From IMG/VR virus record IMGVR_UViG_3300027668_000008, positions 124,001 to 188,000 of that record: a stretch of DNA of 64,000 nucleotides; one strand, given 5' to 3'. Below the pieces are notes generated by a model. The model was not told where the DNA came from. It saw nothing but the letters and a program-made list of their open reading frames with translations, and did not search any database. Below are positions 19,583 to 55,839 of the stretch, piece after piece; positions within the stretch are counted from its first letter, which is position 1; every line of letters starts with the position of its first letter. The translations under genes were made by a program, and so were the position numbers.

Positions 19583-19894
19583 CTATTTGTCTTCTTCGAT
19601 TCTCACTTCTAACGGGTATCCGTCGTTTCTAGCCGCTAGTGTAACTTCGATGCCTTTTTGTTCTGCCATTTCATAAGGATAAGTTGCCACTACGGCTGAA
19701 CCATCTTCGTGTATGTCTACAACAATTTTATTGGCTTGTGCATCTGTATATTCAAAGTAATCTGTTAAACAACTAACTACAAATTCCATTGTAGTTACAT
19801 CATCATTTAACATGATAACTTTCCATAAATTAGGTTCTTTTAGCTCTACTTTAGATGCCGGTTTTACTATGGTTGCATTATTTGTATCTGTCAT
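19583..19894 (-). CDS. clpS: N-degron adaptor ClpS
   Basis: WKVIMLNDDVTTMEFVV, DIHEDGSAVV, AEQK, YPLEV. Confidence 0.93.
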   Translation of the reverse strand: MTDTNNATIVKPASKVELKEPNLWKVIMLNDDVTTMEFVVSCLTDYFEYTDAQANKIVVDIHEDGSAVVATYPYEMAEQKGIEVTLAARNDGYPLEVRIEEDK

Positions 19895-19936
19895 AAGCCC
19901 TTACTTCTTTTATGTGTTTTATTCATTTACTGTTAC

Positions 19937-19965
19937 AGTATACAATATCGTGATGTACTTGTCAA
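19937..19965 (-). promoter_or_regulatory. sigma70-type promoter of the clpS operon
   Basis: TTGACA-N17-TATACT. Confidence 0.8.
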
Positions 19966-19975
19966 CCGCTAAGAT

Positions 19976-20009
19976 AAGGATAGCGACTACAGATTACTGC
20001 AATCGCTAT
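19976..20009 (-). terminator. Hairpin after hsp20
   Basis: GATAGCGA/TCGCTATC inverted repeat. Confidence 0.55.
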
Positions 20010-20023
20010 CTACAGAATTGAAA

Positions 20024-20458
20024 TTACTTAATTTCGATTGTTTTTGGCTTCTTAGACTCTGGAATAATCTTTTCCAATGATACTGTAAGTAAACCATCTT
20101 TTAGTTCTGCACCCTGTGTTACCATATCTTCTGCAAGTGTGAACTTTCTAACAAACTGACGTTTTGAAATACCTTTATGTATTACGCCAGGTTCTGGCTC
20201 TTGCCCTTCATCTGATACTACAGATTTGATGATTAGCTCGTTTTCGATAGTTTTGACTTCAATGTCGTCTTTACCGAATCCTGCTAATGCAACTTCAATA
20301 GTATATGTAAGGTCACCTGTTTTAATGATATTGTACGGTGGGTAATTCAACTGGTTACCTGAGCTCATACGTTCGAAAGAATCGAACATCTCGTCAAAGC
20401 CGATTGTCATCGGGCGTAATTGGTTGAAAAATGATAGATTTGTTTTGTATTGTGTCAT
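20024..20458 (-). CDS. ibpA: Small heat shock protein Hsp20 (IbpA-like)
   Basis: NYPPYNII, IEVALAGF, IHKGISKRQF, LKDGLLTVSL, KPKTIEIK. Confidence 0.95.
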   Translation of the reverse strand: MTQYKTNLSFFNQLRPMTIGFDEMFDSFERMSSGNQLNYPPYNIIKTGDLTYTIEVALAGFGKDDIEVKTIENELIIKSVVSDEGQEPEPGVIHKGISKRQFVRKFTLAEDMVTQGAELKDGLLTVSLEKIIPESKKPKTIEIK

Positions 20459-20520
20459 GCTATAACTCCTTTTTTAGTAAGCAAGTTTGTTGTAATGCAA
20501 CCCTATAATTAGGCATTGCG
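20459..20520 (-). promoter_or_regulatory. ROSE-like RNA thermometer in the hsp20 5'UTR
   Basis: CTTGCTT pairs with the SD AAGGAG leaving a bulged G; upstream hairpin GCAATGCCT/AGGGTTGC. Confidence 0.7.
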
Positions 20521-20688
20521 TATAATAATATGCACTAGAACTATTTCTAATACATACTGTATTATATAGTTATTTATATTCAAAAGTCAAGTCCTTTTGG
20601 TAAAAAAACTCTATAATATGGTACTTTAAACGCACACAGACGTCATATAACGGCACTTTACAGTATATATTACTGTTTACCGTATATA

Positions 20689-20979
20689 TTAACTACGTCT
20701 TTCGTTTTCTTTTTGTAGTTTTTTAGCCCGAGCAATGCCTTGTTTCTTCTTTTCTCTTTTAATTTCCGAAGGCTTTTGATAGTATTGTCTATCTCGTTGC
20801 AGTTGTAGTATACCATCATTCATAATTCGCTTTTTGAGTTTTCTCATAGCCTTAGTCAATGCTTCTGGTCCGTCACCTACTACGTGAACCATTAGTCCCT
20901 CGTCTCGTGGTCTGTCTTCCCATTTCTTCTTGTTATTGAAGTTGTTCTTAAAATTACTTTTGTTTCCTTGGTACGCCAA
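20689..20979 (-). CDS. rpsU: Ribosomal protein bS21 with N-terminal extension
   Basis: ALTKAMRKLKKRI, RDRQYYQKPSEIKREKKK; TTG start. Confidence 0.9.
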   Translation of the reverse strand: MAYQGNKSNFKNNFNNKKKWEDRPRDEGLMVHVVGDGPEALTKAMRKLKKRIMNDGILQLQRDRQYYQKPSEIKREKKKQGIARAKKLQKENERRS

Positions 20980-20980
20980 A

Positions 20981-21355
20981 TTATCCTCCGTTGTTGCTAT
21001 CTAGTTGTTTAACTAATGAAGTAAACACATCGAAACTATAGTTATTGTTTATTGTCCGATGTTCTTCACTATTGTGGTATACGTTAGGGCGTGATAGTAC
21101 CCAACCTAAGTATAACCTGTCAATCTTTGTTTGTTTATCAACAAATACAAAATTGCTTGAATTTATTGTGTTTGCAATCCAAGTAAAGTCTTTGTCGTTT
21201 TCTGTAACACAATGAACACTTACTCTACGTTCATCTTTATCCAGTATTGGTAATATGTCGTTAATTAAAGGAGAATCTCCTACTAAACATATTTTATAAT
21301 CACTATTGTGATCAAAGTCTGGACTTGTTACTATTGTAATTTTATCGTTTATCAT
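20981..21355 (-). CDS. Hypothetical protein
   Basis: 124-aa ORF in operon. Confidence 0.7.
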   Translation of the reverse strand: MINDKITIVTSPDFDHNSDYKICLVGDSPLINDILPILDKDERRVSVHCVTENDKDFTWIANTINSSNFVFVDKQTKIDRLYLGWVLSRPNVYHNSEEHRTINNNYSFDVFTSLVKQLDSNNGG

Positions 21356-23436
21356 TCTTTACCGTTGGATAAAAAGTCTGTCATTGTTCCTTTTTCAGAA
21401 TCTGTTAAATCTTCAAGTTCTATTTCGCCTTGTGCTACTTTCTCGACAAGTGTGCGAACATAATCTTCTGTTAAGTAACCGTCTGTTCCGGACTTATCAA
21501 CTTCGATCCATTTCTTTTCATTCCACTTGTACAATTTGTGTGGGAATAAATCAGTTTTTGTAAACAGTTGTCCATTAACTGCATCTACCGGAAACTTACT
21601 TCCATATGTCGCAGGTGGTACAACGTCTCCATCTTTCATACTAGCCATCATAGTAGCAATATCATTATCTACTTGTGGTTTTAAAATATCAGGTGTCATA
21701 TCTGGAGCACCGTCAACTTCTACTAGTTTATATTTTTCGTTTAATCTAGCAATCGCGGCATCTCTTGCCTTAATTTCTTTTTCCCTTGCTGACAGATTTG
21801 CTTCTACTTCTAATTTTTGTTTTTGTACTTCCAGTTTTTCTAGTAACTGCTTTTCGCTTTCCGATAGTGCCGCTTGTATCTTCGTTTCGTCTTCCACTAG
21901 TTTTTCTACTTCCACCAGTTTCTCTACGACTTCGGGCTCTTTCTCTTCTAAGAACTTTACTGTTGCTTGTAGTTCAGCAAGATTATCATCTTTATTAGAT
22001 ATCTTTTGTTTTAAGCCGTCAGTAACTTTAAGATGTTTTGCATCTGCATCTTCCATTAGTTTCATTAAACGTTGTTCAAGTGCATCTTTGTCTTTGATAG
22101 TTTTATCAATCGCTTTTTGCAGTTTAGTAATGTCTTTATCTTTTGCAGTATTACTAGCCTGCAGAGCATCCATCTTTTCTTCAAGTTGATGGAGGAACTT
22201 CGTATAGTCGTCGATCTTCATTTGTAACTCCTCAATTTTCTGTTGTTTTGCTTCGGGACGATTATGGAATTCTTTTTCCTCACGTCTCCATTTTAATTGC
22301 ATTGTTCCTGCCAACACTAACATGATTGCTAGTGGATCAAACACTATAACAATAATAATGATTACCCAACGCACTGCGTCTTCGAGCATATTTTTGTCTG
22401 CGTCATTGCCGTATATAAACTGTGCAATATATTTAATAGGCCCTACTTCTGCTTCTAGTTTACGATACTCGCCTTCTAGTGCATACTTCTCATCTACAAG
22501 ATTATCAATCTCGTTATTAGCCGTCTTAATTCTTAAATTTTGTGTATCTACTTCTGCATCAATACTTTCTGTTTTATCAGTATCGCCAAGTTGGTTACGC
22601 AACCTATTAATTAATTCATTCGATTGTGTAATTTGTGATTCAACTGTTTTACGCAATCTTTGTATTTCTAAAGCCGCCGCTTTTGCTTGTGTATTGTTAG
22701 AGGCTTGTTCAATTTGAGATAACAAAGATAAACGTTCTTTTTGTTTTAAGTCTTTCCAATCACCAATCTTTTCAGCAGTCTTTTTACCAAACACTCCATC
22801 AGCACTTGCACCGATCATTTGTTGTGCTTTTTTAGTTTCGCCACTATCTATATAACTTTGCAGTGTTGCTAGTGATTGATCTAGTCTAGTAAGTTCTGTT
22901 CTATATAACTCTGCTTGACTATTAATAATTAATTGTTGCTCGTCGATGGAAGGTTGTACCCTAGTATATGCACTATCGATACGTTTTTGTTCCTTGTCGA
23001 TTTGCGATTGTATATTAGCGTCACCGCCAACATTACTTGTTTCTAACTTTTTAATTTTGTTTTCAGCACGGAGAATGATATCCTCTTGCCTAACAATTTC
23101 CCCAGAGATACGTTCAACTTGTGCTACACTTTCTTGTCCAGCACTTGTTTGTTCAATATGTGCTTTACTTAAAAATCCAAAAATTCCCATGCTTGTAATA
23201 AACATAAGAATAATAACTGCTATAACCAAATACCAGCGGGTAAATGCAGGTGCTCTTTTCCAATAAGTGTGTAACCATACTGTAGCAGTAATTTTGCCTA
23301 CTTCCAGTACTATACCCATAAGAATAATAGGAAAAACTGCCGCCGCAAAGATGGCTGTTAATCCTACAATACTGTAGTAAGCCGCTATTGCACTTATACT
23401 TAAAGCGACTAATAATGTTATTAATGCGTAGAACAT
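21352..23436 (-). CDS. Large membrane-anchored coiled-coil protein with a peptidoglycan-binding-like motif
   Basis: Three N-terminal TMs, long coiled coil containing QQMIGASADGVFGKKT, second TM, cytoplasmic coiled coil; TATAAATA at 23441-23448. Confidence 0.7.
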   Translation of the reverse strand: MFYALITLLVALSISAIAAYYSIVGLTAIFAAAVFPIILMGIVLEVGKITATVWLHTYWKRAPAFTRWYLVIAVIILMFITSMGIFGFLSKAHIEQTSAGQESVAQVERISGEIVRQEDIILRAENKIKKLETSNVGGDANIQSQIDKEQKRIDSAYTRVQPSIDEQQLIINSQAELYRTELTRLDQSLATLQSYIDSGETKKAQQMIGASADGVFGKKTAEKIGDWKDLKQKERLSLLSQIEQASNNTQAKAAALEIQRLRKTVESQITQSNELINRLRNQLGDTDKTESIDAEVDTQNLRIKTANNEIDNLVDEKYALEGEYRKLEAEVGPIKYIAQFIYGNDADKNMLEDAVRWVIIIIVIVFDPLAIMLVLAGTMQLKWRREEKEFHNRPEAKQQKIEELQMKIDDYTKFLHQLEEKMDALQASNTAKDKDITKLQKAIDKTIKDKDALEQRLMKLMEDADAKHLKVTDGLKQKISNKDDNLAELQATVKFLEEKEPEVVEKLVEVEKLVEDETKIQAALSESEKQLLEKLEVQKQKLEVEANLSAREKEIKARDAAIARLNEKYKLVEVDGAPDMTPDILKPQVDNDIATMMASMKDGDVVPPATYGSKFPVDAVNGQLFTKTDLFPHKLYKWNEKKWIEVDKSGTDGYLTEDYVRTLVEKVAQGEIELEDLTDSEKGTMTDFLSNGKE

Positions 23437-23455
23437 ATAGTATTTATAACTTCCT

Positions 23456-24085
23456 TTATTTCATAAACGTATGGTTTCCTAGTATACCTAGGTGTTCCAT
23501 TTTGTCTGCCCAGTAAGGATAAACTAAATTATGTGCATAATAATATACTGCACCTATTGTATTATCCGAAATCGTGTACGAACCGTGTCCACTAACTATA
23601 ATTGCAATTTGCACAGATTCTCTCCACGCCCTTGCATTACCTTCGATAGTTTGTCCAGTCGATTCTTTGTTTGCCCAAATCGTATCTGCTTTTCCATCAC
23701 AATACCAACTGAATTGGCATCTATGCTTTTTTGGATAAAATATTGCATCATCTGGATCAGGTGTCTGTTTTGTTTTCCAACTTTCTCTAACCGGACCATC
23801 CATTACAACACCACATAAAGTATTGGGCCATCTTTTATCTGCAACTCTATTTTTAGTTACGTTTGCAACTGCGGCTTTACCACTATAACTTTCAGCTCTT
23901 GCTTCAAAGTAGATATTCTCTGCTAAACACTGTATCGCTGGGTGATAAGCATTTTCTACTTTTTCGTTATTAAGTTCGCCCCACAGAATGTGCTTTGCTT
24001 GTGTTGTCAACGTTGCACCAGTAGTAGCAACTGCTGAATTGGATATTGACATTAAAATACCCGTAATAATTAATAGTTTCCGCAT
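23456..24085 (-). CDS. Cell wall hydrolase, SleB/Hydrolase_2 family
   Basis: CLAENIYFEARAE, AVANVTKNRV, WPNTLCGVV, CQFSWYCDGK, YYYAH, GNHTF. Confidence 0.92.
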   Translation of the reverse strand: MRKLLIITGILMSISNSAVATTGATLTTQAKHILWGELNNEKVENAYHPAIQCLAENIYFEARAESYSGKAAVANVTKNRVADKRWPNTLCGVVMDGPVRESWKTKQTPDPDDAIFYPKKHRCQFSWYCDGKADTIWANKESTGQTIEGNARAWRESVQIAIIVSGHGSYTISDNTIGAVYYYAHNLVYPYWADKMEHLGILGNHTFMK

Positions 24086-24120
24086 ACATATCTCCTTATG
24101 TTTGTTTAACTTACTTTATA

Positions 24121-24148
24121 AGTATAACACAAACAGATATATTGTCAA
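24121..24148 (-). promoter_or_regulatory. sigma70-type promoter (extended -10) with conserved early leader
   Basis: TTGACA-N16-TATACT with TGn; followed by TAAGTTAAACAAACATAAGGAG. Confidence 0.75.
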
Positions 24149-24155
24149 CCTTTAA

Positions 24156-25420: not shown

Positions 25421-25422
25421 TT

Positions 25423-25566: not shown

Positions 25567-25590
25567 AAAACCTTTGGGTTAATGGGTTAA

Positions 25591-26265: not shown

Positions 26266-26310
26266 TGAATACCTCTTATTGTAATATACTTATCTTATCT
26301 TATTTTAACC

Positions 26311-26340: not shown

Positions 26341-26479
26341 AAAATTACTTGGTACTTTTTATATATCTGTATATAGTTCGTCACGTTCACTGAAACGTGT
26401 GCAATTAGAAAGTGTATTTCCATGTTACCAGTGTATGCTTGTAACAATCCTTTGTCACTAATGTTTCTAACTTTGGTAT

Positions 26480-26745
26480 ATGCAACGATTTCTGTTGCTA
26501 GGTACGTTGCCAACCCCCACGTGCTTATTTTACTAAGCCGCTAATGCCATTTCTGGCTGATAATTGTTATTTGCAATTATAAAGTTTCTTCGCGATAACG
26601 GTGCTTAGATCCCGAGAACTCCACTAACTCTAGTAATTACCTGTCGATCCTATTCATCCCCATATGAAAAATCTGTTGTATTTGGTGGAGATGCCGGGAT
26701 TCGCACCCGGGTCCAGTTTAACTTTTGAATTGCTTCAACGTTCTA
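26480..26745 (-). ncRNA. ssrA: Circularly permuted two-piece tmRNA (alphaproteobacterial type), tag ANNNYQPEMALAA
   Basis: Acceptor piece ends with T-arm and CATCTCCACCA at 26683; 21-nt spacer; coding piece starts GGGGATGAATAGGATCGAC at 26661 (G3:U70); tag ORF 26574-26533; CCTAGCAACAGAA near the 3' end. Confidence 0.93.
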
Positions 26746-26749
26746 AGTA

Positions 26750-26780
26750 TATTTATACACTATTCACTTGACTTTGTCAA
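26750..26780 (-). promoter_or_regulatory. Hybrid sigma70 / late promoter of tmRNA
   Basis: TTGACA-N17-TATAAA, where the -10 is part of TATAAATA. Confidence 0.8.
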
Positions 26781-26865
26781 CCAAATAATATACAAATAAA
26801 GTACTAATATTAAAAATAAAAGATAAGTATTCTATAAAAGCAAAATACATCAACTAAAGGTAATT

Positions 26866-27114: not shown

Positions 27115-27140
27115 ACGTGAGTGTAAATCATAACCCAATA

Positions 27141-27272: not shown

Positions 27273-27279
27273 GGAATAA

Positions 27280-27478: not shown

Positions 27479-27880
27479 ATGGAACATCTTGTACATAAAC
27501 ATATTATCATCAGAGCTGATGTAATAAATCCACCGTTAGATGCTACAAGTACATCTGACAGTGTAAAAGAATTAATTCAACAAATAGGTATGAAAATACT
27601 TATGGGACCTTACGCAACATATTGCGATATGCCAGGTAACAGAGGTCTTACAGTTGCAACAATAATAGAAACTTCACATATAGTATTACATTCATGGGAC
27701 GAATCAAGTCCTGCTAATCTACAATTAGATGTTTATACTTGCGGTGAGTTTAATCCCCAAATAGTATTCGATTGGTTAAAACAATTTAACCCTGTCAGAG
27801 TAGACTACAAATACTTAGACAGAGAACACGGTTTAACCGAAATAGATATACACCCCTCAACAGTAAATATAGCAGTTTAA
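27479..27880 (+). CDS. speD: Pyruvoyl-dependent S-adenosylmethionine decarboxylase family protein
   Basis: HKHIII, GLTVATIIETSHIVLHSWDE, QLDVYTCG. Confidence 0.85.
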   Translation: MEHLVHKHIIIRADVINPPLDATSTSDSVKELIQQIGMKILMGPYATYCDMPGNRGLTVATIIETSHIVLHSWDESSPANLQLDVYTCGEFNPQIVFDWLKQFNPVRVDYKYLDREHGLTEIDIHPSTVNIAV

Positions 27881-42074: not shown

Positions 42075-42857
42075 ATGAACTATGATTCACACCATGCAAT
42101 GCTTTCTGCCTGTGCATACACGGATCTAAACCCATCTATTGAAGCAACTTTTAGTAAAATAGGGTATAAAACCATCCATTTTTTGAATACCGATGGGGCT
42201 CAAGCATATTTGTTGAGCAATGATGACCTTATTACGATTGCTTTTAGAGGTACTGAACCTAGTCAACCTAGCGATCTTATTGCTGATGCCAAAAGTTGGA
42301 AAAGTAAGAGTAAAGTTGCAGGTAAAGTACATGATGGATTTTATGATGAAATTGAAAAGATTTGGGATGAAATTGAAGAATTTGCAAATAACAACCCAAA
42401 AAAACAAATGACTATTACCGGTCACAGTTTAGGTGCCGCGATGGCAACACTCTGTGCCGCAAGGTTACAAGATAAGTTTGAGGATTTAGCATTATATACA
42501 TATGGTTCGCCACGTGTTGGTAATAAAGAATTCATAAACAGTTGTAAATTTAAACACTATCGTTGGGTTAATAACAATGATGCGGTAACTAGAGTTCCAC
42601 CTGCGTTTATTGGTTTTAGACATCACGGTCAAATGAAATATTTAAACCATTTTGGCAATATTAGAAACGGGTTAAGTACATGGCAACGTTTCAAAGACAG
42701 GATACGAGGAAGAATTTCTGCTTGGAAAAAGTGGCAATTATTTGATGGTGCATATGATCACAGTATTAGTGATTACCATAGAAAAATTAATAAAGCACAT
42801 TTATCTAAAACAAAAGATGGTAAAGTGATACTAGACCAATTTAAACCTAAAGACTAA
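42075..42857 (+). CDS. Lipase class 3
   Basis: IAFRGTE, VHDGFY, ITGHSLGAAMA, YGSPRVGN, NNDAVTRVPP, DHSISDY; AGGAG RBS; TAAATA at 42032. Confidence 0.92.
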   Translation: MNYDSHHAMLSACAYTDLNPSIEATFSKIGYKTIHFLNTDGAQAYLLSNDDLITIAFRGTEPSQPSDLIADAKSWKSKSKVAGKVHDGFYDEIEKIWDEIEEFANNNPKKQMTITGHSLGAAMATLCAARLQDKFEDLALYTYGSPRVGNKEFINSCKFKHYRWVNNNDAVTRVPPAFIGFRHHGQMKYLNHFGNIRNGLSTWQRFKDRIRGRISAWKKWQLFDGAYDHSISDYHRKINKAHLSKTKDGKVILDQFKPKD

Positions 42858-46099: not shown

Positions 46100-46474
46100 A
46101 TGGACGAGTTACTAGAAAAATTACTTAATCAATACCCATTTTTAAGCCATATTAGTTATGGGCAAAAAGAGTATATCGGGATAATTCAAAACCGAGACTC
46201 TCATTGCACTAGTTTTTATGACTACGAAAAAGTTCAAGACATAGAGCTAAAAAGGCACTATCTGTCATTAGCCGAAACTTGGTGGTGGGAATCAAATAGA
46301 ATGATTCCAATCAACATATTCCTTAAACAAGATTGGGTCTGCTTTAGACCTTACCTAACAACTTTTGTTAGTAAGGACTGTAATGTACTTGCAGGACCAC
46401 AAGTTAGTCTTAGTGAATTGTCTAAAAAGCGTACTAAAAGACGCTCTATTCAATTGGTCAAAAAAGTAAACTAA
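46100..46474 (+). CDS. Conserved hypothetical protein
   Basis: 124-aa ORF, convergent with the ferredoxin. Confidence 0.75.
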
Positions 46475-46830
46475 ACTTCCTCACCAGGATTTTCACTTAA
46501 AAATTCTGTCTTATCACCTATGTCCGGATTCAGTTTTGGATTATTAGCATCTGCATCATCCATTTCATCAATTTTTTCAGTAATGACAGGCCATAGTTCA
46601 GACATTCTAGTATTAATGTCTAACCATTTTTCTCGCTCTTCTGGTTCAAAGTCTGTATCTGCTCTAATAGCACCTGCTGGACATTCCGGTTCACACACTC
46701 CACAATCAATACATTCATCTGGATTAATTGCTATTGAATTCTCTCCTATGTAGAAACAATCTACTGGGCATACTGATACGCAATCTGTATACCTACATTT
46801 AATACATTTATCGTCTACTAGATATGTCAC
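46471..46830 (-). CDS. fdxA: 7Fe ferredoxin (FdxA type)
   Basis: [18 protein letters not shown] and [13 protein letters not shown]-terminal W..IN...S..WP. Confidence 0.93.
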
Positions 46831-49124: not shown

Positions 49125-49142
49125 GTTGTTATTATAACACCT

Positions 49143-49893: not shown

Positions 49894-49894
49894 A

Positions 49895-50503
49895 TTAATA
49901 TAACTCCTTAATTTTGTCTGCTATACCAAATTTGACTGCTTCTTTGGCTGATAACCAAATGTCCTGTGGTGGTAACAATACTTCTCTGATTTTCTTTTCA
50001 GATAATCCAGTACATTTTTTATAATGTTGCATCATACGTTCGCTTGATAGTTCAAACTCTCTAACACGGGCAAATAACTCATGTTCTTTACCTGTTGAAC
50101 CCCAACTGTATTGATGTGATAAAATACTTGTATTAGGCGTAATGATACGTTTGCCTTTTGCTCCACTCATAAATGTAAGTATACCACAACTTGCAATAAG
50201 TCCTAGTCCTACGGTTTTGATTGGAATACCACTTGCCTTCATTGTATCAATTAAAGCAAATGCACTATGCACATCACCGCCTGGACTATTAATAATAAGT
50301 GTTAGCTCTTTAGGGCGTTCAGTATCCGGTGCCAAGTTCTTTTCAATAATCCACTGAATTACTGGCTTTGTAGTTTCAGTTGTAAATGGATCTGCAAAGT
50401 AATAAACACCTGCCTCCCACATAAGTATTCCAGGTGGTTTAGGTTGCACTGTAGGTTTTCCTTGTTTAACGTTTTTCATTATTTGATTCTCCATATTATT
50501 CAT
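49895..50503 (-). CDS. clpP: ClpP-family protease
   Basis: INSPGGDV, GLIASCG (Ser), ILSHQY (His), DIWLSAKEAVKFGIAD. Confidence 0.92.
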   Translation of the reverse strand: MNNMENQIMKNVKQGKPTVQPKPPGILMWEAGVYYFADPFTTETTKPVIQWIIEKNLAPDTERPKELTLIINSPGGDVHSAFALIDTMKASGIPIKTVGLGLIASCGILTFMSGAKGKRIITPNTSILSHQYSWGSTGKEHELFARVREFELSSERMMQHYKKCTGLSEKKIREVLLPPQDIWLSAKEAVKFGIADKIKELY

Positions 50504-51959
50504 TCCAATCTGTCTTTTTTACAACAAATGGATAATTTGCTTCTTTATAGAAGTTTTTTCGTTTAGTTAAATGTCGCTTGGCATATTTACAAGTACTTGT
50601 AATATCCCATATTTTAACAAAATCTTTATCACTTGCTTTACGAATACCACGTCCAATACTTTGTATTACTCTTACAAAACTTTTTCCTGGTTCGATTAAT
50701 ACAAGGTTAAATATCCTTGGTATATTAATACCTACTGCCGCAACACCATATGTTGCTACAATAATCTTATTGTCAACGTCTGCAATCTCGTCATAGTGTG
50801 CTTTTCTGTCACTTGTTTTAGTGGCACCACTTACAAATACTGCTTTGTCTCCAAGTCTGCTTACTAGTTCTTTACCCGATTCTACTCTGTCTACTAATAC
50901 AAGAGTATTGCCATCTTGCCCTATTGTACCGAGCAGTTTAGCAAGATAATCCAATCTTTTTGCGTTTGTTAGCAAATACTTTAATTCACTTTGATAGTTT
51001 CCATAATCTCCATGGTCAATTAATTGCAATACATTAACTTCACAGTTAGCAAGTACACCCTGTTCTTGTAATTCACTTGCAGTTTTTCTACCAACTACTT
51101 CTCCTAAACTTACCATAATACTCATAAATTCAAAATCTTCTTTTGGCACTGTTCCTGTTAGTCCCCAACGAATTGGTATTTGACTCATAGGTCCTGTTAA
51201 CAATGTTTTCAATGCATCCGCTTTTGCCATATGCACTTCATCTACCATAACACAAACTACACCTGCAATAAATTCTTGTATAGTAATAGGTGCAACTGCG
51301 TTCTTTGTATTCTTTAAAAGAATGTTTAGACTTTGCCAAGTACAAATAGTATGCTTGTGTCCAAACTCTTTTCGGTCTCCGTAAAACACACCAACGTCTA
51401 GTCCCATGTTGACATAGTCTTCTTCTGTTTGTGTTACTAGCGACTTATTTGGCACTATTACAATGCTTCTACCGTACTGTTCGACTTTACTACTTAATGC
51501 GGCAGTTATTAATGTCTTACCTGCACCAGTGGCAATCTCCTGCATACTTTGTGGATTCTTTAAGAAATTATTAATAATCTCTACTTGGTAATCACGCAAT
51601 ACAATTGGTTCGCCTACAAGTTGATGACCTTTGGGCCACATCACATCATTAAATGCAGTTTCGTCAATTTCATCAAAATCAAATCTTGTTTGATAATCTC
51701 GTTGATCATCTAGTTCAATTTGATATTTCATTTCTTCTAACACAGGAATAATCTTTGGAAGAAGATTAATGTATGTGCTACCACCTAACTGAAAGTATGC
51801 AACTTTTCCGTCCCACCGTCCTAAACGAACTGCTGGAAGATATCGTGCATAAGGAACTTCGTACTTAAACATATTAGACAATCGACGCCTAGCGTCTAGT
51901 TCTAACCCTTTTATAGAAACGTTTACTTCGTCTCTAATCAATAATTTTGCTTGTGGCAT
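50496..51959 (-). CDS. uvsW: SF2 helicase (UvsW-like)
   Basis: LRDYQ, ATGAGKT, DEVH, GLTGT, QSIGRGIR. Confidence 0.9.
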   Translation of the reverse strand: MPQAKLLIRDEVNVSIKGLELDARRRLSNMFKYEVPYARYLPAVRLGRWDGKVAYFQLGGSTYINLLPKIIPVLEEMKYQIELDDQRDYQTRFDFDEIDETAFNDVMWPKGHQLVGEPIVLRDYQVEIINNFLKNPQSMQEIATGAGKTLITAALSSKVEQYGRSIVIVPNKSLVTQTEEDYVNMGLDVGVFYGDRKEFGHKHTICTWQSLNILLKNTKNAVAPITIQEFIAGVVCVMVDEVHMAKADALKTLLTGPMSQIPIRWGLTGTVPKEDFEFMSIMVSLGEVVGRKTASELQEQGVLANCEVNVLQLIDHGDYGNYQSELKYLLTNAKRLDYLAKLLGTIGQDGNTLVLVDRVESGKELVSRLGDKAVFVSGATKTSDRKAHYDEIADVDNKIIVATYGVAAVGINIPRIFNLVLIEPGKSFVRVIQSIGRGIRKASDKDFVKIWDITSTCKYAKRHLTKRKNFYKEANYPFVVKKTDWNE

Positions 51960-53154: not shown

Positions 53155-53172
53155 TCTTATTCCTTAAAGGTA

Positions 53173-53193
53173 AAAAGCGGTCCGAAGACCGCC
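53173..53193 (-). terminator. Rho-independent terminator
   Basis: GCGGTC-TTCG-GACCGC followed by TTTTT on the minus strand. Confidence 0.85.
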
Positions 53194-53204
53194 TTATTAA
53201 TTTG

Positions 53205-54230
53205 TTATGCTCTTCGCATACACGTTGAAGCCGCCAAGTTCTGCCAATTGCTCGGACTTAACTTTTTAAGGTCCGCAATCTTTAGTGCCATCCTTAACGA
53301 CATTTCCCTTAGGAACTTTCTTTTCTCAAACATGAATTGAAGTATTTCTTTCTCTTCATCATCTGACATCTTAAAGTTTTGAAACAAATCACCTTTTCGA
53401 GCAATTTGTTGAATTCTAAGATACTTGTCTCGTTCAGTATCAAGTGTTAAGTCAATGTAATGACAACGTGACATTAAAGCATCTAAGTGATCTTTAAGTC
53501 TTTTGCTTTTAACATTGTCAAACTTGATGTTTGTAATAAAGCAAACACTTCCTTGGAAGTCGAAACTGTTAGGAATACCTTCTGCTCTCAATTTACTTGA
53601 ATCTGCATTCCAGTAAATCTTACGTCTAGCACCACTATCAAGTGCCGCTTTAAGAATGTTAAGAGCTAAATCATCTAGCAATACACTATCACAGTCATCA
53701 AATACAACTACGTTACCACGAGCACTGTATTCATAAAGTTTAGCATAAAGACCTAGTGCCGTCATTGCACCTTTTACAAATTCAAACTTCCTATTACCAG
53801 CAAGGTCATCGAAACCCGACTGTTCTTCTAGTGTAGTTTCGACACCGTATGATTTACCAACACCTGGAGGTCCAGTAACAATCATTGCCCTAATGTCATT
53901 ATTTTTAAGAGCACCTGTCATTTCATTCAGGATCTCAAACCTATCCTGGATTTCTATGATCCTCTTTTCGTCTTTTGCATTTAACTTGGAACTTTCTTTA
54001 GGTGTATCTGCTTCAACTTGTGAAGCATATTCTGACCTATCAACGAAAGTAATTGCGGTAGGGGTTTTAATCTTTACCCTAATTTTGTCTGATCCAAAGC
54101 CCTCTGTTCCATCTACAGTAACAAACATTCCTGTTTTGCTTTCTGTAATGTTTTTCACTAATGGGAAAACTTTGTTCTTTATTGCTTGGTTTCTGTATGA
54201 ACCACTTTTAACTAAAACGTAACTATTCAT
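53205..54230 (-). CDS. AAA+ ATPase
   Basis: IVTGPPGVGKS, VVFDDCD, FITN, ALMSR; sigma70 promoter at 54276-54303. Confidence 0.9.
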   Translation of the reverse strand: MNSYVLVKSGSYRNQAIKNKVFPLVKNITESKTGMFVTVDGTEGFGSDKIRVKIKTPTAITFVDRSEYASQVEADTPKESSKLNAKDEKRIIEIQDRFEILNEMTGALKNNDIRAMIVTGPPGVGKSYGVETTLEEQSGFDDLAGNRKFEFVKGAMTALGLYAKLYEYSARGNVVVFDDCDSVLLDDLALNILKAALDSGARRKIYWNADSSKLRAEGIPNSFDFQGSVCFITNIKFDNVKSKRLKDHLDALMSRCHYIDLTLDTERDKYLRIQQIARKGDLFQNFKMSDDEEKEILQFMFEKRKFLREMSLRMALKIADLKKLSPSNWQNLAASTCMRRA

Positions 54231-54315
54231 GTATGACTCCTATTCGTCGTTTTTTGTTTAAATGTTTATATTACTATAATAACACATCTGTACTATGTGT
54301 CAACCTTTTATTTCA

Positions 54316-54753
54316 TTATGCGGCAACCTTTTGGTTAGTTGTTTCATAATTTTTGTTCCATGCACCAACGGCAATGTTGATATAATATGCAGTATGGAAA
54401 TAATCTGTTTGGCAGTCTGACTCATCAAACCAACCTTTGCCTTTATGATAACCGTTTCCGTTAATTGGAGCAGTTTTACATATTTCATATATGCTATCAA
54501 ACAATGCTTTATGTATACCATAAAAATTTGTATGATAATGATTAATTTGTGCCGAGCCTGGAAATGGTGTAATTTTCTGTGAATACCTGTCAAAGAAATC
54601 TAAAGATCCATCATAAAAGTCAACATCACCTGAAACCAATGTAACTTGTACACTTGAATGGTGATCTTTTCTTACACTAAACTTAATGTTAGGATATTGT
54701 TTTTTAAGTTCTTGTCTAATTGCTTTAACATCTTCTTTATTAACAAACGCCAT
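54316..54753 (-). CDS. LPD29-like polyvalent-protein domain
   Basis: AIRQELKKQYPNIKFSVR, DCQTDYFH; sigma70 promoter at 54790-54817. Confidence 0.7.
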   Translation of the reverse strand: MAFVNKEDVKAIRQELKKQYPNIKFSVRKDHHSSVQVTLVSGDVDFYDGSLDFFDRYSQKITPFPGSAQINHYHTNFYGIHKALFDSIYEICKTAPINGNGYHKGKGWFDESDCQTDYFHTAYYINIAVGAWNKNYETTNQKVAA

Positions 54754-54813
54754 ATTATGTATCTCCTTATTTGTTTAACTTATATTACTAGTATAGCATC
54801 TTACGTCTATCTG

Positions 54814-55134
54814 TCAACCTTTTAGACCCCATTTCTTTAATAATGGTGCAATATTAACCATTGATTTTACTGGATTTTCTGACTCAATGGAAGTTTTTAA
54901 AACTTTTTTCTTCTTTTTTAAACGTATTTGGTAAGATCCAGGACCTCTCATAGGTGTTAATACTTCGGATATACTAGGTATTGCTTCACACCATTTGTGC
55001 ATTTCGTCATATATCTTGCCCTGTCCTGTAATTACTGTAAACTTTACAACACCATTTAATTCACATAACTCAACGTGTACTTTAAATTTACGCCAAGCAT
55101 CGTGTAATGTGTATCCGTGTAAATCTAACCGCAT
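54814..55134 (-). CDS. Stand-alone Smr domain protein
   Basis: LDLHGYT, VITGQG, GPGSYQI. Confidence 0.85.
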   Translation of the reverse strand: MRLDLHGYTLHDAWRKFKVHVELCELNGVVKFTVITGQGKIYDEMHKWCEAIPSISEVLTPMRGPGSYQIRLKKKKKVLKTSIESENPVKSMVNIAPLLKKWGLKG

Positions 55135-55340
55135 TAATCAAAACTGAATGTTAATTCCATACCACTAAAATTTGCAACATATAAGTTCTTACCCTTATAT
55201 CTATTAAAGTTTAGAGGTACTCCCTCTAACATTACTTTAACTACATCATTATGTGATTGAATAACAGTCCCTTCCCATTTCCTATCGTTATCAGTACAAT
55301 GTACCATAACTTTATCTGGTTCTCCACTATCAAATTGCAT
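55134..55340 (-). CDS. Small beta-rich hypothetical protein
   Basis: 68-aa coupled ORF. Confidence 0.65.
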   Translation of the reverse strand: MQFDSGEPDKVMVHCTDNDRKWEGTVIQSHNDVVKVMLEGVPLNFNRYKGKNLYVANFSGMELTFSFD

Positions 55341-55839
55341 TGACTACTCCTTGTGCTTGTTTGTATATATCCATTAAATGTATCTTTGTCATTGCTTTTA
55401 ATAACAAGTCCATTTCAGCGATATAAGTTACTGCGAACTTTGGATCGTTAACTTTGATATCCTTACCATTGCTAATCATATCTGCCGCTTTTATTAATTG
55501 TGCCGCCGCTGATGCTTGGCTTAACCGGTCTCTATCAATGCCTTTACGCACTGTACGATTCCCGTCTCCGGGCTTTGAAGTATCAGTTAACCATTTAACC
55601 ATGTCAGCAGTAGAATTGCCAAATAAGACTCGTATTTCATCATTTGTTACGTTAGTGTCTTCTACTACATCATGTAATAAAGCCGCGGCAATCATTTCTT
55701 TACTGCCGTTGTGACTACGAACAATGTCTGCTACTTCTTCTGTGTGAGTAACATAAGGTAAGCCTGTGTATTTGCGAACTTGCCCTGTGTGTGACACACG
55801 GGCAAATTCTTTGGCTTTTTCTATAAACACTTCGTCCAT
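55330..55839 (-). CDS. RelA/SpoT-type HD hydrolase (small alarmone hydrolase, Mesh1-like)
   Basis: HTGQVRK, PYVTH, AALLHDVVEDT, VKWLTD, IKAADMISN. Confidence 0.9.
   Translation of the reverse strand: MDEVFIEKAKEFARVSHTGQVRKYTGLPYVTHTEEVADIVRSHNGSKEMIAAALLHDVVEDTNVTNDEIRVLFGNSTADMVKWLTDTSKPGDGNRTVRKGIDRDRLSQASAAAQLIKAADMISNGKDIKVNDPKFAVTYIAEMDLLLKAMTKIHLMDIYKQAQGVVNAI

What the first reader, a model, noticed from the sequence alone, without database searches (positions are those of the whole stretch)
19583..55839. Dispersed but coherent ribosome-rescue and proteostasis toolkit
The window encodes tmRNA with an ALAA degron, a stand-alone Smr domain, ClpP, ClpS, Hsp20, bS21, four tRNAs and an alarmone hydrolase. 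In E. coli, SmrB cleaves mRNA at collided ribosomes, feeding tmRNA, which feeds Clp proteolysis. Nearly the whole chain is phage-encoded here, except SmpB and ClpX/A. Inference: it frees ribosomes stalled by host mRNA decay or anti-phage tRNases.
Basis: partly seen in the sequence, partly recalled or inferred. Interest (0 to 1): 0.65.

Follow-up and report, generated by a model that had tools for sequence, protein, structure and literature searches.

The report
Phage translation and Clp proteolysis genes
A 307-kb marine T4-like phage carries its own tmRNA, ribosomal protein bS21, small heat-shock protein, Smr nuclease, alarmone hydrolase and a full ClpA/ClpS/ClpP-type protease. The set is real and conserved in its relatives, but it consists of separate early gene modules of a kind already seen in jumbo phages, not a demonstrated single rescue pathway.

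Summary
The four tRNAs lie at 3985-4617, outside the stated range. The window is part of a 306.7-kb marine T4-like phage record. SmpB and ClpX are absent from that record. A full-length ClpA is present 47 kb upstream of the window, in a DnaJ-deformylase-ClpA cluster, so the phage has a complete ClpA/ClpS/ClpP-type set.

The ClpP-like gene is not the head protease, because a T4 gp21-type protease sits next to the capsid gene. It is a divergent ClpP with an intact catalytic triad but no canonical N-terminal loop.

The Smr has the Smr fold and keeps the DxH and GxG motifs. It lacks the SmrB N-terminal hook, which SmrB needs to bind ribosomes. It is translationally coupled to the alarmone hydrolase in a conserved four-gene operon.

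The tmRNA is structurally intact. Its tag ends in ALAA in all 13 related phages read, and marine RNA libraries contain it.

The genes travel together in a large uncultured clade and partly in a soil Sinorhizobium jumbo phage, but large relatives lack some of them. E. coli ClpS inhibits ClpAP degradation of ssrA-tagged proteins, which works against a simple tmRNA-to-Clp chain here.

Verdict: observation confirmed, linear-pathway reading partly supported, and the gene set is a new member of a known kind.

The parts
3985..4617 (-). Four tRNA genes: Arg(gcg), Ala(tgc), Ser(act), Thr(tgt). All encode CCA.
   Evidence: ARAGORN and Rfam tRNA hits of 59-67 bits. Four more tRNAs (Gln, Leu, Trp, Arg-tct) lie at genome positions 108.5-112.8 kb.
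19038..19574 (-). Rv2179c-like DEDD 3'-5' exonuclease. It starts 9 nt downstream of the ClpS stop and is probably co-transcribed with ClpS.
   Evidence: PF16473, 135 bits. The spacing is read from the ORF list.
19583..19894 (-). ClpS, the N-degron adaptor of ClpA. A sigma-70-like promoter (TTGACA-17-TATACT) lies at 19965-19937 and a hairpin at 20010-19979 upstream.
   Evidence: Pfam ClpS 94.9 bits. The NDDxTxMxFV and His pocket motif is read from the sequence. Predicted binding to the phage ClpA N-domain scores ipSAE 0.84 against a best control of 0.04. Promoter and hairpin.
20024..20458 (-). Small heat-shock protein (Hsp20, IbpA-like), with its own promoter-like site at 20590-20561.
   Evidence: PF00011 59.6 bits; phrog_432 147.9 bits; IbpA model 105 bits, below its equivalog cut-off.
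20689..20979 (-). Ribosomal protein bS21 homologue. It has a TTG start with a 30-residue basic N-terminal extension; an internal ATG would give 67 aa.
   Evidence: PF01165 37 bits; TIGR00030 40.9 bits against 28.95; phrog_21469. RNA-library contigs cover 20800-21202 with no mismatches.
26442..26799 (-). Two-piece (permuted) alphaproteobacterial-type tmRNA gene. Promoter TTGACA at 26780-26775 and TATAAATA at 26757-26750. Acceptor piece (T-arm, CCA) at 26721-26683. Coding-piece 5' end (GGGGAUG) at 26661. Tag ORF at 26574-26530, encoding ANNNYQPEMALAA followed by two stops.
   Evidence: RF01849 107 bits and RF04321 112.7 bits. ARAGORN anatomy. The promoter and stems are conserved, with compensatory changes in relatives. 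RNA contigs end exactly at 26661.
49895..50503 (-). Divergent ClpP-family serine peptidase ('ClpP-like'). Its start overlaps the stop of the UvsW-like helicase gene (50496-51959) by 8 nt.
   Evidence: PF00574 111 bits. All ClpP equivalog models score far below their cut-offs. Ser105, His130 and Asp181 are invariant in 24 sequences. The AF2 model matches solved ClpPs at TM about 0.8. It lacks the canonical LVPMVVEQ..RGERSYDI N-terminus. Relatives occur in 323 IMG/VR contigs.
54814..55134 (-). Stand-alone minimal Smr-domain protein (106 aa). The LDLHG motif is at residues 3-7, so there is no N-terminal extension. A TGxG motif is present. A lysine-rich linker is followed by a conserved C-terminal tail, ..PLLKKWGLKG.
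   Evidence: PF01713 26.8 bits against 25.7. D4, L5, H6, G7, T36, G37 and G39 are invariant in 11 homologues. The AF2 core has pLDDT about 90, and the top 11 PDB matches are Smr domains, including MutS2 Smr (TM 0.80-0.81), YdaL and SmrB on the disome.
55134..55340 (-). ORF68, an unknown small protein. It is translationally coupled to both neighbours: an 11-nt overlap with the hydrolase gene and a TAATG overlap with Smr.
   Evidence: Sequence. No Pfam family; only viral hypothetical clusters in the ESM Atlas. Conserved between the hydrolase and Smr in five relatives.
55330..55839 (-). Small alarmone hydrolase-like protein: a RelA/SpoT-type HD domain only, with no synthetase domain.
   Evidence: PF13328 HD_4 57.9 bits; TIGR00691 N-terminal region 72.9 bits; phrog_990. 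The HD and ED motif 'LLHDVVEDT' is read.
55841..56310 (-). First gene of the operon (122 aa, unknown function, phrog_5014) at 55841-56209. Upstream lie a promoter-like site TTGACA-16-TATTAT (56270-56243) and a terminator-like hairpin (56310-56288).
   Evidence: The gene order gene122, hydrolase, ORF68, Smr, LPD29 gene is conserved in five relatives.

Best explanation
The window is the early, non-structural arm of a marine T4-like jumbo phage. That arm carries a modular set of genes for translation and protein quality control, conserved across its clade. The modules are transcribed separately:

1. DnaJ, peptide deformylase and ClpA, outside the window.
2. ClpS (with an exonuclease gene), Hsp20 and bS21, each with its own promoter-like site.
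3. A two-piece tmRNA behind a conserved sigma-70-type promoter.
4. A divergent ClpP-like peptidase coupled to a UvsW-like helicase gene.
5. An operon of gene122, alarmone hydrolase, ORF68 and Smr.

Most likely mode of action (inferred): these genes are expressed early by host RNA polymerase and re-tune the infected cell's translation and proteolysis.
- The phage tmRNA, charged by host AlaRS and delivered by host SmpB, adds trans-translation capacity and marks truncated products with an ALAA-ended degron. Those products go mainly to host ClpXP. In the sister subclade the phage supplies its own ClpX and canonical ClpP.
- Phage ClpA, steered by phage ClpS, forms a second route that prefers N-degron substrates. 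It would use the ClpP-like peptidase or host ClpP.
- Hsp20 and DnaJ hold or hand over unfolded proteins. Deformylase and bS21 act on nascent chains and on initiation. The hydrolase removes alarmone-type pyrophosphates.
- The role of the Smr nuclease is open. It could act on mRNA at ribosomes or on DNA.

Shown here: gene identities, intact motifs, conservation, operon structure, and presence of the tmRNA in RNA libraries. Inferred: every functional coupling between the modules.
For: Identity of the parts.

The genome is T4-like and has its own gp21-type prohead protease at 234.9 kb, beside the gp23 capsid gene at 232.5 kb.

ClpA is full length. It aligns collinearly with E. coli ClpA (E 1.8e-178, residues 5-748 against 3-746). 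It has both Walker sets and an IGF loop, 'KRGIGFNS'. ClpS is predicted to bind the ClpA N-domain: ipSAE 0.84, best control 0.04. That mark was reached by 51 of 78 solved complexes and 2 of 108 mismatched pairs. The runs share at least 74% of contacts, and partner pLDDT is at least 85.

Conservation among 15 contigs carrying the ClpP-like orthologue, most of them 35-65-kb fragments: tmRNA in 10, Smr in 10, bS21 in 10, ClpS in 8, hydrolase in 5. The complete 328-kb relative G001 has DnaJ-PDF-ClpA, the tmRNA and the ClpP-like gene. It also has Smr, ClpX, bS21, Hsp20, ClpS and a canonical ClpP within 19.5 kb.

The tmRNA tag ends in ALAA in all 13 phage tmRNAs read, while upstream tag residues vary. 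The acceptor and T stems covary.

RNA-library contigs identical to the phage (186 nt, no mismatches) stop exactly at the predicted mature 5' end of the coding piece, in two runs.

The four-gene hydrolase-Smr operon is conserved in five relatives.

A cultured soil phage, Sinorhizobium phage Phosso, has a ClpP-like orthologue (55.8% identity), an annotated Smr/MutS family protein, a small heat-shock protein one gene from ClpS, a ribosome recycling factor and IF-1.

Published jumbo phages of Alphaproteobacteria carry comparable sets (PMC6102473, PMC11242549, PMC7824862).
Against: - There is no direct functional evidence for any coupling.
- Co-occurrence is largely shared ancestry within one syntenic clade.
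- Large relatives lack subsets. G003 (131 kb) has ClpS, bS21 and ClpP-like but no tmRNA or Smr. G029 (280 kb) has ClpS, Hsp20, bS21, a weak tmRNA match, ClpA and DnaJ but no ClpP or Smr. G030 (282 kb) has only ClpA, DnaJ and a third-type ClpP.
- Promoter-like site counts do not exceed shuffled controls (37 against 33.3 +/- 5.0; 31 against 30.0 +/- 4.7).
- The ClpP-like protein lacks the canonical N-terminal axial loop, so docking to ClpA is unproven.
- The host, and therefore the host's SmpB and ClpXP, is unknown.
- RNA-library contigs cannot prove transcription.
Confidence: 0.5

Rival explanations
1. The phage Smr cleaves mRNA at collided ribosomes, which creates non-stop complexes. The phage tmRNA resolves them and tags the products. 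The phage Clp proteins then degrade the tagged products. The result is an almost self-contained viral ribosome-rescue pathway.
For: - The Smr keeps the DxH and GxG catalytic and RNA-binding motifs and the Smr fold.
- Smr, tmRNA, bS21 and the Clp genes co-occur in the clade.
- In sister phages, Smr, ClpX, bS21, ClpS and ClpP lie within about 20 kb.
- The SmrB paper reports that the SMR domain contacts bS21 on the stalled ribosome, and that S21 and SMR genes are linked in operons in several bacteria.
- The tag ends in ALAA.
Against: - There is no N-terminal hook. An SmrB cut down to its SMR domain alone does not bind ribosomes.
- Short-form homologues (78-80 aa) are nothing but the domain.
- This genome has no ClpX. 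Its ClpA comes with ClpS, which in E. coli inhibits degradation of ssrA-tagged proteins.
- G003 and G029 keep ClpS and bS21, with or without the tmRNA, but have no Smr.
- Smr and the tmRNA are in different transcription units, 28 kb apart.
Confidence: 0.15
2. There is no pathway at all. The genes are unrelated auxiliary or host-takeover genes. They sit together only because T4-like phages gather accessory early genes in one genomic arm and then inherit them together.
For: - There are at least five separate transcription units, interspersed with ribonucleotide reductase, DnaB-like helicase, primase, UvsW, lipase, ferredoxin and cell-wall hydrolase genes.
- Large relatives lack subsets.
- With the ClpA block included, the clustering is not significant (p about 0.08).
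- Each component is individually known in phages.
Against: - The Hsp20-ClpS neighbourhood and the DnaJ-(PDF)-ClpA cluster persist from marine to soil jumbo phages, at about 45-55% protein identity.
- Six such genes lie within 19.5 kb in G001 (p about 8e-6 under a uniform null).
- ClpS and ClpA are a known obligate pair and are predicted to bind.
- The hydrolase, ORF68 and Smr genes are translationally coupled.
Confidence: 0.2
3. This is a counter-defence reading. The operon of gene122, hydrolase, ORF68 and Smr, together with the phage tRNAs and tmRNA, mainly neutralises host immunity that targets translation. Targets would include toxic alarmone synthetases that pyrophosphorylate tRNA or make (pp)pApp, and anticodon nucleases.
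For: - A phage small alarmone hydrolase (PaSpo, from Salmonella phage SSU5) is reported to neutralise toxic small alarmone synthetase toxins (PMC9712102).
- The hydrolase here is the second gene of a tight early operon that ends in a nuclease.
- Two phage tRNAs carry unusual wobble bases, Ser-ACT and Arg-GCG.
- In Phosso the Smr gene lies one gene from a polynucleotide kinase gene and near a nucleotidyl transferase gene, which is an RNA-repair-like setting.
Against: - The hydrolase is missing from the complete relative G001 and from G002, which keep Smr.
- No substrate is known.
- No defence system of the unknown host can be named.
- No PADLOC or anti-defence search was run.
Confidence: 0.12
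4. The Smr is a DNA-nicking enzyme used in phage recombination or repair, like the Thermus MutS2 Smr domain or E. coli YdaL. On this reading it has nothing to do with ribosomes.
For: - The best structural matches include the MutS2 Smr domains of Thermus and Deinococcus and the stand-alone YdaL.
- The gene lies among replication and recombination genes: UvsW-like 50496-51959, primase, DnaB-like helicase, and UvsX-like 59928-60998.
Against: - The same fold search matches ribosome-bound SmrB and B. subtilis MutS2 equally well.
- The gene is co-translated with an alarmone hydrolase, not with DNA enzymes.
- No clamp-binding or DNA-binding motif was identified.
Confidence: 0.2
5. The ClpP-like protein is a virion (prohead) maturation protease.
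For: The best PHROG match is phrog_94, 'head maturation protease' (104 bits). The NCBIfam ClpP-related head-maturation model scores 66 bits.
Against: - The genome has a T4 gp21-type S77 protease beside the capsid gene, 60 kb away.
- The ClpP-like gene is coupled to a helicase gene.
- Its orthologues in Phosso, BUCT-ZZ01 and RsoM2USA also lie outside the head modules, next to MutT and IF-1, or near PhoH.
- Its scores against true ClpP models are higher (97 bits), and the head-maturation model's cut-off of 120 bits is not reached.
Confidence: 0.04

Closest known systems
Translation and proteostasis gene sets of T4-like jumbo phages of Alphaproteobacteria (Agrobacterium phage Atu_ph07, Sinorhizobium phages AP-J-162 and Phosso)
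   Same: - They carry several Clp genes (ClpA, ClpS, ClpP, ClpX), Hsp20, DnaJ, deformylase, bS21, tRNAs, and a tmRNA in AP-J-162.
- ClpA lies next to DnaJ.
- Phosso has a ClpP-like orthologue at 55.8% identity, an Smr/MutS family protein, and a small heat-shock protein one gene from ClpS.
   Different: - The phage here is marine, 307 kb long and 35% GC, and it carries curli CsgGF genes like pelagimyophages.
- It has fewer translation factors and only 8 tRNAs.
- It has no ClpB, ClpX or canonical ClpP.
- Its Smr is fused into an operon with an alarmone hydrolase.
- It has no nucleotide-level similarity to any GenBank phage except 177 bp.
Two-piece tmRNA of marine T4-like myophages (Methylophilales phage Melnitz and pelagimyophages; PMC9004378)
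   Same: - It is a permuted alphaproteobacterial-type ssrA behind an early-type promoter in a T4-like marine phage that also carries hsp20 and curli csgGF genes.
- No SmpB is encoded.
   Different: - No glutamine riboswitch reached the Rfam gathering score in this window.
- The genome is twice as large and adds the Clp, Smr and hydrolase genes.
- blastn finds no tmRNA similarity to any GenBank phage.
E. coli ClpAPS N-degron protease
   Same: - ClpA is full length and has an IGF loop.
- ClpS has a conserved N-degron pocket motif and a predicted ClpA N-domain interface at residues 72-82.
   Different: - The only ClpP-family partner encoded here is divergent: 27-29% identical to the canonical phage ClpPs and lacking the N-terminal axial loop.
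- No Aat (Leu/Phe transferase) is encoded.
E. coli SmrB (collision-sensing mRNA endonuclease)
   Same: It shares the Smr fold and the DxH and GxG motifs.
   Different: - It lacks the whole N-terminal extension that hooks onto uS2. SmrB needs that extension to bind ribosomes.
- Motif II is TGxG.
- The long form has an unrelated conserved C-terminal tail.
Phage small alarmone hydrolases (for example PaSpo of Salmonella phage SSU5)
   Same: It is a hydrolase-only RelA/SpoT homologue encoded by a phage.
   Different: - Its subfamily was not determined.
- It is co-translated with ORF68 and Smr.
- It is present only in one subclade.

Membership tests
Two-piece (alphaproteobacterial-type) tmRNA | Covariance-model score above the curated gathering score over the full model | tested here: met
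   RF01849 scores 107 bits against 50 over model positions 1-355. RF04321 scores 112.7 against 47.
Two-piece (alphaproteobacterial-type) tmRNA | tRNA-like domain with a G3:U pair for AlaRS, a T-arm and a 3' CCA, with stems maintained by compensatory changes | tested here: met
   The acceptor is 5' GGGGAUG paired with CAUCUCCACCA. In relatives the stem reads AUG/CAU, GCG/CGC, GUG/CAC and CCG/CGG. The T stem covaries as well.
Two-piece (alphaproteobacterial-type) tmRNA | Resume codon and short tag ORF ending in a hydrophobic degron plus a stop codon | tested here: met
   The tag is ANNNYQPEMALAA followed by two stops. ALAA is invariant in all 13 phage tmRNAs read.
Two-piece (alphaproteobacterial-type) tmRNA | SmpB partner available | tested here: not met
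   SmpB (PF01668) is absent from G000 and from G001, G002, G003, G029 and G030. The phage must depend on host SmpB. The host is unknown, so compatibility cannot be tested.
Two-piece (alphaproteobacterial-type) tmRNA | Expressed and processed into two pieces | tested here: inconclusive
   RNA-library contigs cover 26476-26661 (no mismatches) and 26512-26661. Both end at the predicted 5' end of the coding piece. Contigs cannot prove transcription or transcript ends.
ClpS | ClpS domain above cut-off, with the N-degron pocket residues present | tested here: met
   Pfam 94.9 bits. The motif 'LNDDVTTMEFV' and the His in 'DIHEDG' are read; assigning them to the pocket rests on knowledge of E. coli ClpS. 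The NCBIfam equivalog cut-offs are not reached.
ClpS | Binds the ClpA N-domain | tested here: inconclusive
   The predicted complex scores 0.84 against a best control of 0.04. That mark was reached by 51 of 78 solved complexes and 2 of 108 mismatched pairs. A like complex has been solved, so the pass may reflect memory.
ClpA (class I Clp/Hsp100 unfoldase that docks on ClpP) | N-domain plus two AAA+ modules, collinear with ClpA and without the ClpB middle domain | tested here: met
   E 1.8e-178 to E. coli ClpA, as one stretch, residues 5-748 against 3-746. ClpB, ClpC and Hsp104 match in two stretches. AAA, AAA_lid_9, AAA_2 and ClpB_D2-small domains are found.
ClpA (class I Clp/Hsp100 unfoldase that docks on ClpP) | ClpP-docking IG(F/L) loop | tested here: met
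   'EKRGIGFNSAEEN' lies in the D2 module. Its position was judged against the E. coli ClpA loop from knowledge.
Canonical ClpP | Ser-His-Asp triad and the ClpP fold with its handle helix | tested here: met
   S105, H130 and D181 are invariant. The model matches solved ClpPs at TM 0.72-0.83 over 168-181 columns. The handle region has low pLDDT.
Canonical ClpP | Curated ClpP equivalog or subfamily score | tested here: not met
   The best score is 97.4 bits against a cut-off of 249. TIGR00493 scores 76.8 against 308.6.
Canonical ClpP | N-terminal axial loop that contacts the unfoldase | tested here: not met
   The canonical phage ClpPs begin LVPMVVEQSSRGERSYDI. The ClpP-like family instead has a K/P/Q-rich, low-confidence N-terminus.
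ClpP-type head maturation protease | Encoded in the head module and is the phage's prohead protease | tested here: not met
   A T4 gp21-type S77 protease (99 bits) lies at 234.9 kb, beside the gp23 capsid gene at 232.5 kb. The ClpP-like gene is at 173.9 kb and is coupled to a helicase gene. NF045542 scores 66 bits against a cut-off of 120.
SmrB-type collision endonuclease | Smr domain with DxH and GxG motifs | tested here: met
   D4, L5, H6, G37 and G39 are invariant. Fold matches include 7qgr_v, which is SmrB on the disome.
SmrB-type collision endonuclease | N-terminal helix and hook that binds uS2 and is needed for ribosome binding | tested here: not met
   The protein starts at the LDLHG motif (residue 3) in all 11 homologues. 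The requirement is reported in the SmrB paper.
SmrB-type collision endonuclease | Cleaves mRNA between collided ribosomes | not testable with these tools
   This needs a biochemical assay.
Small alarmone hydrolase (hydrolase-only RelA/SpoT homologue) | RelA/SpoT-type HD domain above cut-off, HD and ED motifs present, no synthetase domain | tested here: met
   HD_4 scores 57.9 bits against 27.2. The protein is 169 aa. The only other family hit is the generic HD domain.
Ribosomal protein bS21 | Equivalog model above cut-off | tested here: met
   TIGR00030 scores 40.9 against 28.95, and Pfam scores 37 against 27.

The most novel reading that the evidence does not exclude
The phage runs its own ribosome quality-control circuit, with these parts:
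- A hook-less Smr nuclease reaches stalled or collided ribosomes by a viral route. That route could be phage bS21, which sits at the known SMR contact site, or ORF68, or the conserved C-terminal tail.
- The Smr is co-translated with an alarmone/tRNA-pyrophosphate hydrolase.
- It feeds the phage's tmRNA.
- The ALAA-tagged products are then cleared by phage-encoded Clp machines: ClpXP in the sister subclade and ClpA with the ClpP-like peptidase here.

The purpose would be to keep translation going against host shut-off or against immunity that targets translation.
Probability: 0.12. Interest if true: 0.8.

Novelty: new member of a known kind. Interest (0 to 1): 0.4.

Why it matters
If the modules do cooperate, this abundant marine phage clade would be a natural example of a virus importing much of a bacterial ribosome-rescue and regulated-proteolysis network. 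The ClpP-like orthologue alone occurs in 323 IMG/VR contigs, and the phage is found in marine metagenomes from many studies.

Three specific questions then become testable:
- Can a minimal Smr domain without the SmrB hook act on ribosomes, perhaps through a phage bS21?
- What does a divergent, loop-less ClpP do beside a phage ClpA and ClpS?
- Does a phage tmRNA tag host or phage proteins?

As it stands, the finding mostly extends known jumbo-phage gene repertoires to a new marine lineage. It also corrects two points: ClpA is present, and the ClpP-like gene is not the head protease.

Tried and rejected
- **Close GenBank relatives.** There are none. Megablast found only a 177-bp match to the Melnitz phages. 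The tmRNA had no blastn match in GenBank phages. The Smr had no tblastn match there, although a family search did find an Smr in Phosso.
- **Host identification.**
It gave at most 41-45% identity, mostly to Gammaproteobacteria, so it says nothing about a donor or a host.
  - The tmRNA was searched against 401 sampled alphaproteobacterial genomes. Only 27-41-nt matches turned up, nearly all in the T-arm region, at 83-93% identity.
  - The host remains unknown. Only weak pointers exist: an alphaproteobacterial-type tmRNA, curli csgGF genes as in pelagimyophages and Melnitz, and marine samples.
- **Further rescue or N-degron genes.** SmpB, the RF-1/ArfB domain and Aat were not found in G000, nor in G001, G002, G029 or G030.
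- **ORF68.** A KOW-like partner for Smr was considered. ORF68 has no Pfam hit and matches only viral hypothetical clusters, so this stays untested.
- **Smr C-terminal tail.** It was compared by eye with clamp-binding motifs, and no convincing match was seen. No tool test was run.
- **Promoter scans.** Total site counts equal the shuffled expectation. Only individual 11-of-12 sites in intergenic positions, and the conserved tmRNA promoter, are used, and only as hints.
- **ARAGORN tag 'GTPTLVLIG' in G006 and G008.** This call is rejected. It is the end of an ORF inserted in the tmRNA spacer. The real tags there end in ALAA.
- **ClpP-like as head protease.** Rejected.

Full report
**1. Setting**

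The window is positions 124001-188000 of a 306,714-bp IMG/VR virus record. The record is linear, and CheckV puts its completeness at 87%. GC content is about 35%, and nearly all genes are on the minus strand.

The genome is T4-like. It has a gp23-type major capsid gene at 232.5 kb (330 bits) and a T4 gp21-type S77 prohead protease at 234.9 kb (99 bits). No GenBank phage is close; the only match is 177 bp to the Methylophilales phage Melnitz group.

The window also carries curli csgG and csgF genes. The Melnitz paper describes these as a hallmark of pelagimyophages and Melnitz. The sequence occurs in marine metagenomes from many studies and, in part, in marine metatranscriptomes.

**2. The observation**

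| Item | Window coordinates (minus strand) | Evidence |
|---|---|---|
| ClpS | 19583-19894 | |
| Hsp20 | 20024-20458 | |
| bS21 | 20689-20979 | |
| Permuted alphaproteobacterial-type tmRNA, tag ANNNYQPEMALAA | 26442-26799 | |
| ClpP-family gene | 49895-50503 | |
| Stand-alone Smr | 54814-55134 | |
| HD_4 alarmone-hydrolase-like gene | 55330-55839 | |
| Four tRNAs | 3985-4617 (outside the stated range) | |

The genome has four more tRNAs at 108.5-112.8 kb. The rest of the window holds replication, nucleotide-metabolism and miscellaneous genes:
- ribonucleotide reductase and glutaredoxin;
- a DnaB-like helicase, a primase, and UvsW-like and UvsX-like proteins;
- a staphylococcal-type nuclease and a cell-wall hydrolase;
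- a lipase, a ferredoxin, UvdE and a CHASE2-cyclase.

**3. What the window did not show**

A search of the whole record found a 778-aa protein at genome positions 74604-76940. It aligns end to end with E. coli ClpA (E 1.8e-178, residues 5-748 against 3-746, one stretch). ClpB, ClpC and Hsp104 match it in two stretches. It carries both Walker sets and an IGF loop.

Directly upstream of it lie a peptide deformylase gene and a DnaJ-domain gene. The phage therefore encodes ClpA, ClpS and a ClpP-family peptidase.

Phage ClpS is predicted to bind the phage ClpA N-domain. The ipSAE score is 0.84 against a best control of 0.04. That mark was reached by 51 of 78 solved complexes and 2 of 108 mismatched pairs. 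The runs agree in at least 74% of contacts, and partner pLDDT is at least 85. A like complex has been solved, so this shows likeness, not binding.

The record has no match to the SmpB, ClpX zinc-finger, Aat or RF-1/ArfB families.

**4. The ClpP-like gene**

It clears the Pfam cut-off (111 bits) but falls far short of every curated ClpP model (97 bits against 249). Its best PHROG match is a head-maturation family.

It is not the head protease. The T4-type protease sits beside the capsid gene. The ClpP-like start overlaps the stop of a UvsW-like helicase gene. Its orthologues also lie outside head modules in Sinorhizobium phage Phosso (55.8% identity), Synechococcus phage BUCT-ZZ01 (48.5%) and Ralstonia phage RsoM2USA (34%).

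Ser105, His130 and Asp181 are invariant across 24 sequences of three ClpP classes. The model superposes on solved ClpPs at TM about 0.8. The family lacks the canonical N-terminal axial-loop sequence.

Relatives at 71-100% identity fill the 80 best of 323 matching IMG/VR contigs. The complete relative G001 and the relative G002 each carry three ClpP-family genes, one of them canonical at 271-281 bits.

**5. The Smr**

The Pfam hit is marginal. Eleven homologues share invariant DLHG and TGxG motifs. The AF2 model has a core pLDDT of about 90, and its top eleven PDB matches are all Smr domains. They include the MutS2 Smr domain, YdaL, SmrB on the disome and B. subtilis MutS2 on the disome.

All homologues begin at the DLHG motif, so the SmrB N-terminal hook is absent. 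The SmrB paper reports that the SMR domain alone does not bind ribosomes. The same paper notes that the SMR domain contacts bS21, and that S21 and SMR genes are linked in operons in several bacteria.

There are two forms:
- a 78-80-aa bare domain;
- a 106-108-aa form with a conserved tail..PLLKKWGxKG.

The long form is always the last gene of an operon made of gene122, the hydrolase, ORF68 and Smr. That operon has overlapping stop and start codons, a promoter-like site and an upstream hairpin. It is conserved in five relatives. RNA and DNA substrates cannot be told apart with these tools.

**6. The tmRNA**

The structure is complete:
- a 3' tRNA-like piece ending in CCA;
- a 5' piece starting GGGGAUG, with a G3:U pair;
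- a resume codon and tag ORF followed by two stops.

The TTGACA-N17-TATAAATA promoter is conserved in relatives, and the acceptor and T stems change by compensatory pairs.

The tags differ between relatives:

| Phage record(s) | Tag |
|---|---|
| G000 (this window) | ANNNYQPEMALAA |
| G014 | ANDNYAPEMALAA |
| G007 | ANDNFASEDFALAA |
| G006, G008 | ANTMFANEDLALAA |
| G011, G041 | ANDNFANEEFALAA |
| G001, G002, G005, G009, G010 | ADENLALAA |
| G029 | a 31-aa tag ending in FALAA |

All 13 end in ALAA.

In two marine RNA libraries, contigs matching the phage end exactly at 26661, the predicted mature 5' end of the coding piece. One is 186 nt long with no mismatches. Their depths are 68 and 118, against 4-23 for contigs of neighbouring genes. 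The tool warns that contigs prove neither transcription nor levels.

**7. Co-occurrence**

Fifteen contigs carry the ClpP-like orthologue, mostly as 35-65-kb fragments. Among them the tmRNA is found in 10, Smr in 10, bS21 in 10, ClpS in 8 and the hydrolase in 5. The hydrolase is always found beside Smr.

Two subclades appear:
- Subclade A, which includes this genome, has long tags, the long Smr with the hydrolase operon, and no ClpX or canonical ClpP at the syntenic place.
- Subclade B, which includes the complete 328-kb G001, has the short tag, the short Smr, ClpX and a canonical ClpP, and no hydrolase.

In G001, Smr, ClpX, bS21, Hsp20, ClpS and ClpP lie within 19.5 kb.

Large relatives show that the modules can be separated:
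- G003 has ClpS, bS21 and ClpP-like, but no tmRNA or Smr.
- G029 has ClpS-Hsp20-bS21, a weak tmRNA match, ClpA and DnaJ, but no ClpP or Smr.
- G030 has only ClpA, DnaJ and a third-type ClpP.

Outside the clade, Phosso has ClpP-like, Smr, ClpS, a small heat-shock protein, a ribosome recycling factor and IF-1. BUCT-ZZ01 and RsoM2USA have neither Smr nor ClpS.

The clustering statistics are and are post hoc. Most of the co-occurrence is explained by shared ancestry and synteny.

**8. Interpretation**

Clp genes, bS21, tmRNAs and chaperones in jumbo phages are already documented (PMC7824862, PMC6102473, PMC11242549, PMC7162821, PMC9004378).

The best-supported reading is a modular early-gene set that re-tunes translation and proteolysis. 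The pairings within modules are well supported: ClpS with ClpA, DnaJ-PDF-ClpA, and hydrolase-ORF68-Smr. The coupling between modules is unproven.

- the missing SmrB hook;
- the reported inhibition of ssrA-substrate degradation by ClpS (PMC8666677);
- the separate transcription units.

It is helped by the invariant ALAA tag end, by ClpX and ClpP in sister phages, and by the published link between bS21 and SMR domains.

**9. Limits**

The host is unknown. The record is 87% complete. All family searches of fragmentary contigs can show presence but not absence.

Noticed in passing
window 3985-4061 and 4223-4312 (minus strand): Two phage tRNAs have unusual wobble bases. tRNA-Arg has anticodon GCG (loop ttGCGga). 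The type-II tRNA-Ser has anticodon ACT (loop ttACTaa). The usual bacterial forms are ACG and GCT. All four tRNAs in the window encode their CCA end.
   Followed up: partly
L190 (G006), L189 (G008), L187 (G011), L188 (G041): the spacer between the two tmRNA pieces: In four relatives, the segment between the acceptor piece and the coding piece of the permuted tmRNA gene holds an insert of about 330 nt. The insert contains an ATG..TAA ORF for a hydrophobic protein of about 110 aa. ARAGORN mistakes the end of that ORF for the tag.
   Followed up: partly
window 9030-15808 (minus strand): A curli-type secretion set: CsgG at 14282-15355, CsgF at 15359-15808, a FecR-like gene at 12509-13600 and a weak curlin-repeat protein at 11095-12549. 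It lies beside a 677-aa CHASE2 sensor fused to an adenylate/guanylate cyclase (9030-11063). This suggests phage-encoded cyclic-nucleotide signalling.
   Followed up: no
genome G000:C1:74604-78194 (outside the window; loci L001, L003): The DnaJ-domain protein, peptide deformylase and ClpA genes are adjacent. The DnaJ-ClpA neighbourhood recurs in G001, G029 and G030. According to the literature it also occurs in Atu_ph07 (gp292 and gp293) and AP-J-162 (gp154 and gp155).
   Followed up: partly
G001:C1:156926-157456, G002:C1:73956-74465, G030:C1:273316-273834 (loci L193, L195, L196): There is a third, distinct ClpP-family class of 186-191 aa, 31-36% identical to the ClpP-like gene, with the catalytic triad intact. 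G001 and G002 therefore carry three ClpP paralogues each.
   Followed up: partly
window 54814-54900 (Smr C-terminus) and homologues in L172, L175, L176, L178, L179: The long-form Smr has a lysine-rich linker and a conserved C-terminal peptide, ..KNPxKSxxNxxPLLKKWGxKG. Its function is unknown, and it may be a docking motif.
   Followed up: no
window 27479-27880 (+), 17189-18328 (-), 46471-46830 (-), 42075-42857 (+): Other auxiliary metabolic genes are present: an S-adenosylmethionine decarboxylase, a GMP reductase/IMPDH-family enzyme, a 2x[4Fe-4S] ferredoxin and a class-3 lipase.
   Followed up: no
PV764938.1 (Sinorhizobium phage Phosso) 367954-372209; locus L203: In Phosso, the annotated Smr/MutS family protein lies one gene from a polynucleotide kinase gene and near a nucleotidyl transferase gene. 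This is an RNA-repair-like neighbourhood.
   Followed up: no
The look-up of sequencing runs rows X14 and X21: The phage stretch (66% of its sampled words) also occurs in the assembly of a run labelled with a single organism ('organism A'). That run belongs to a study that also has a 2026 Hi-C library. Such data might link the phage to a host.
   Followed up: no
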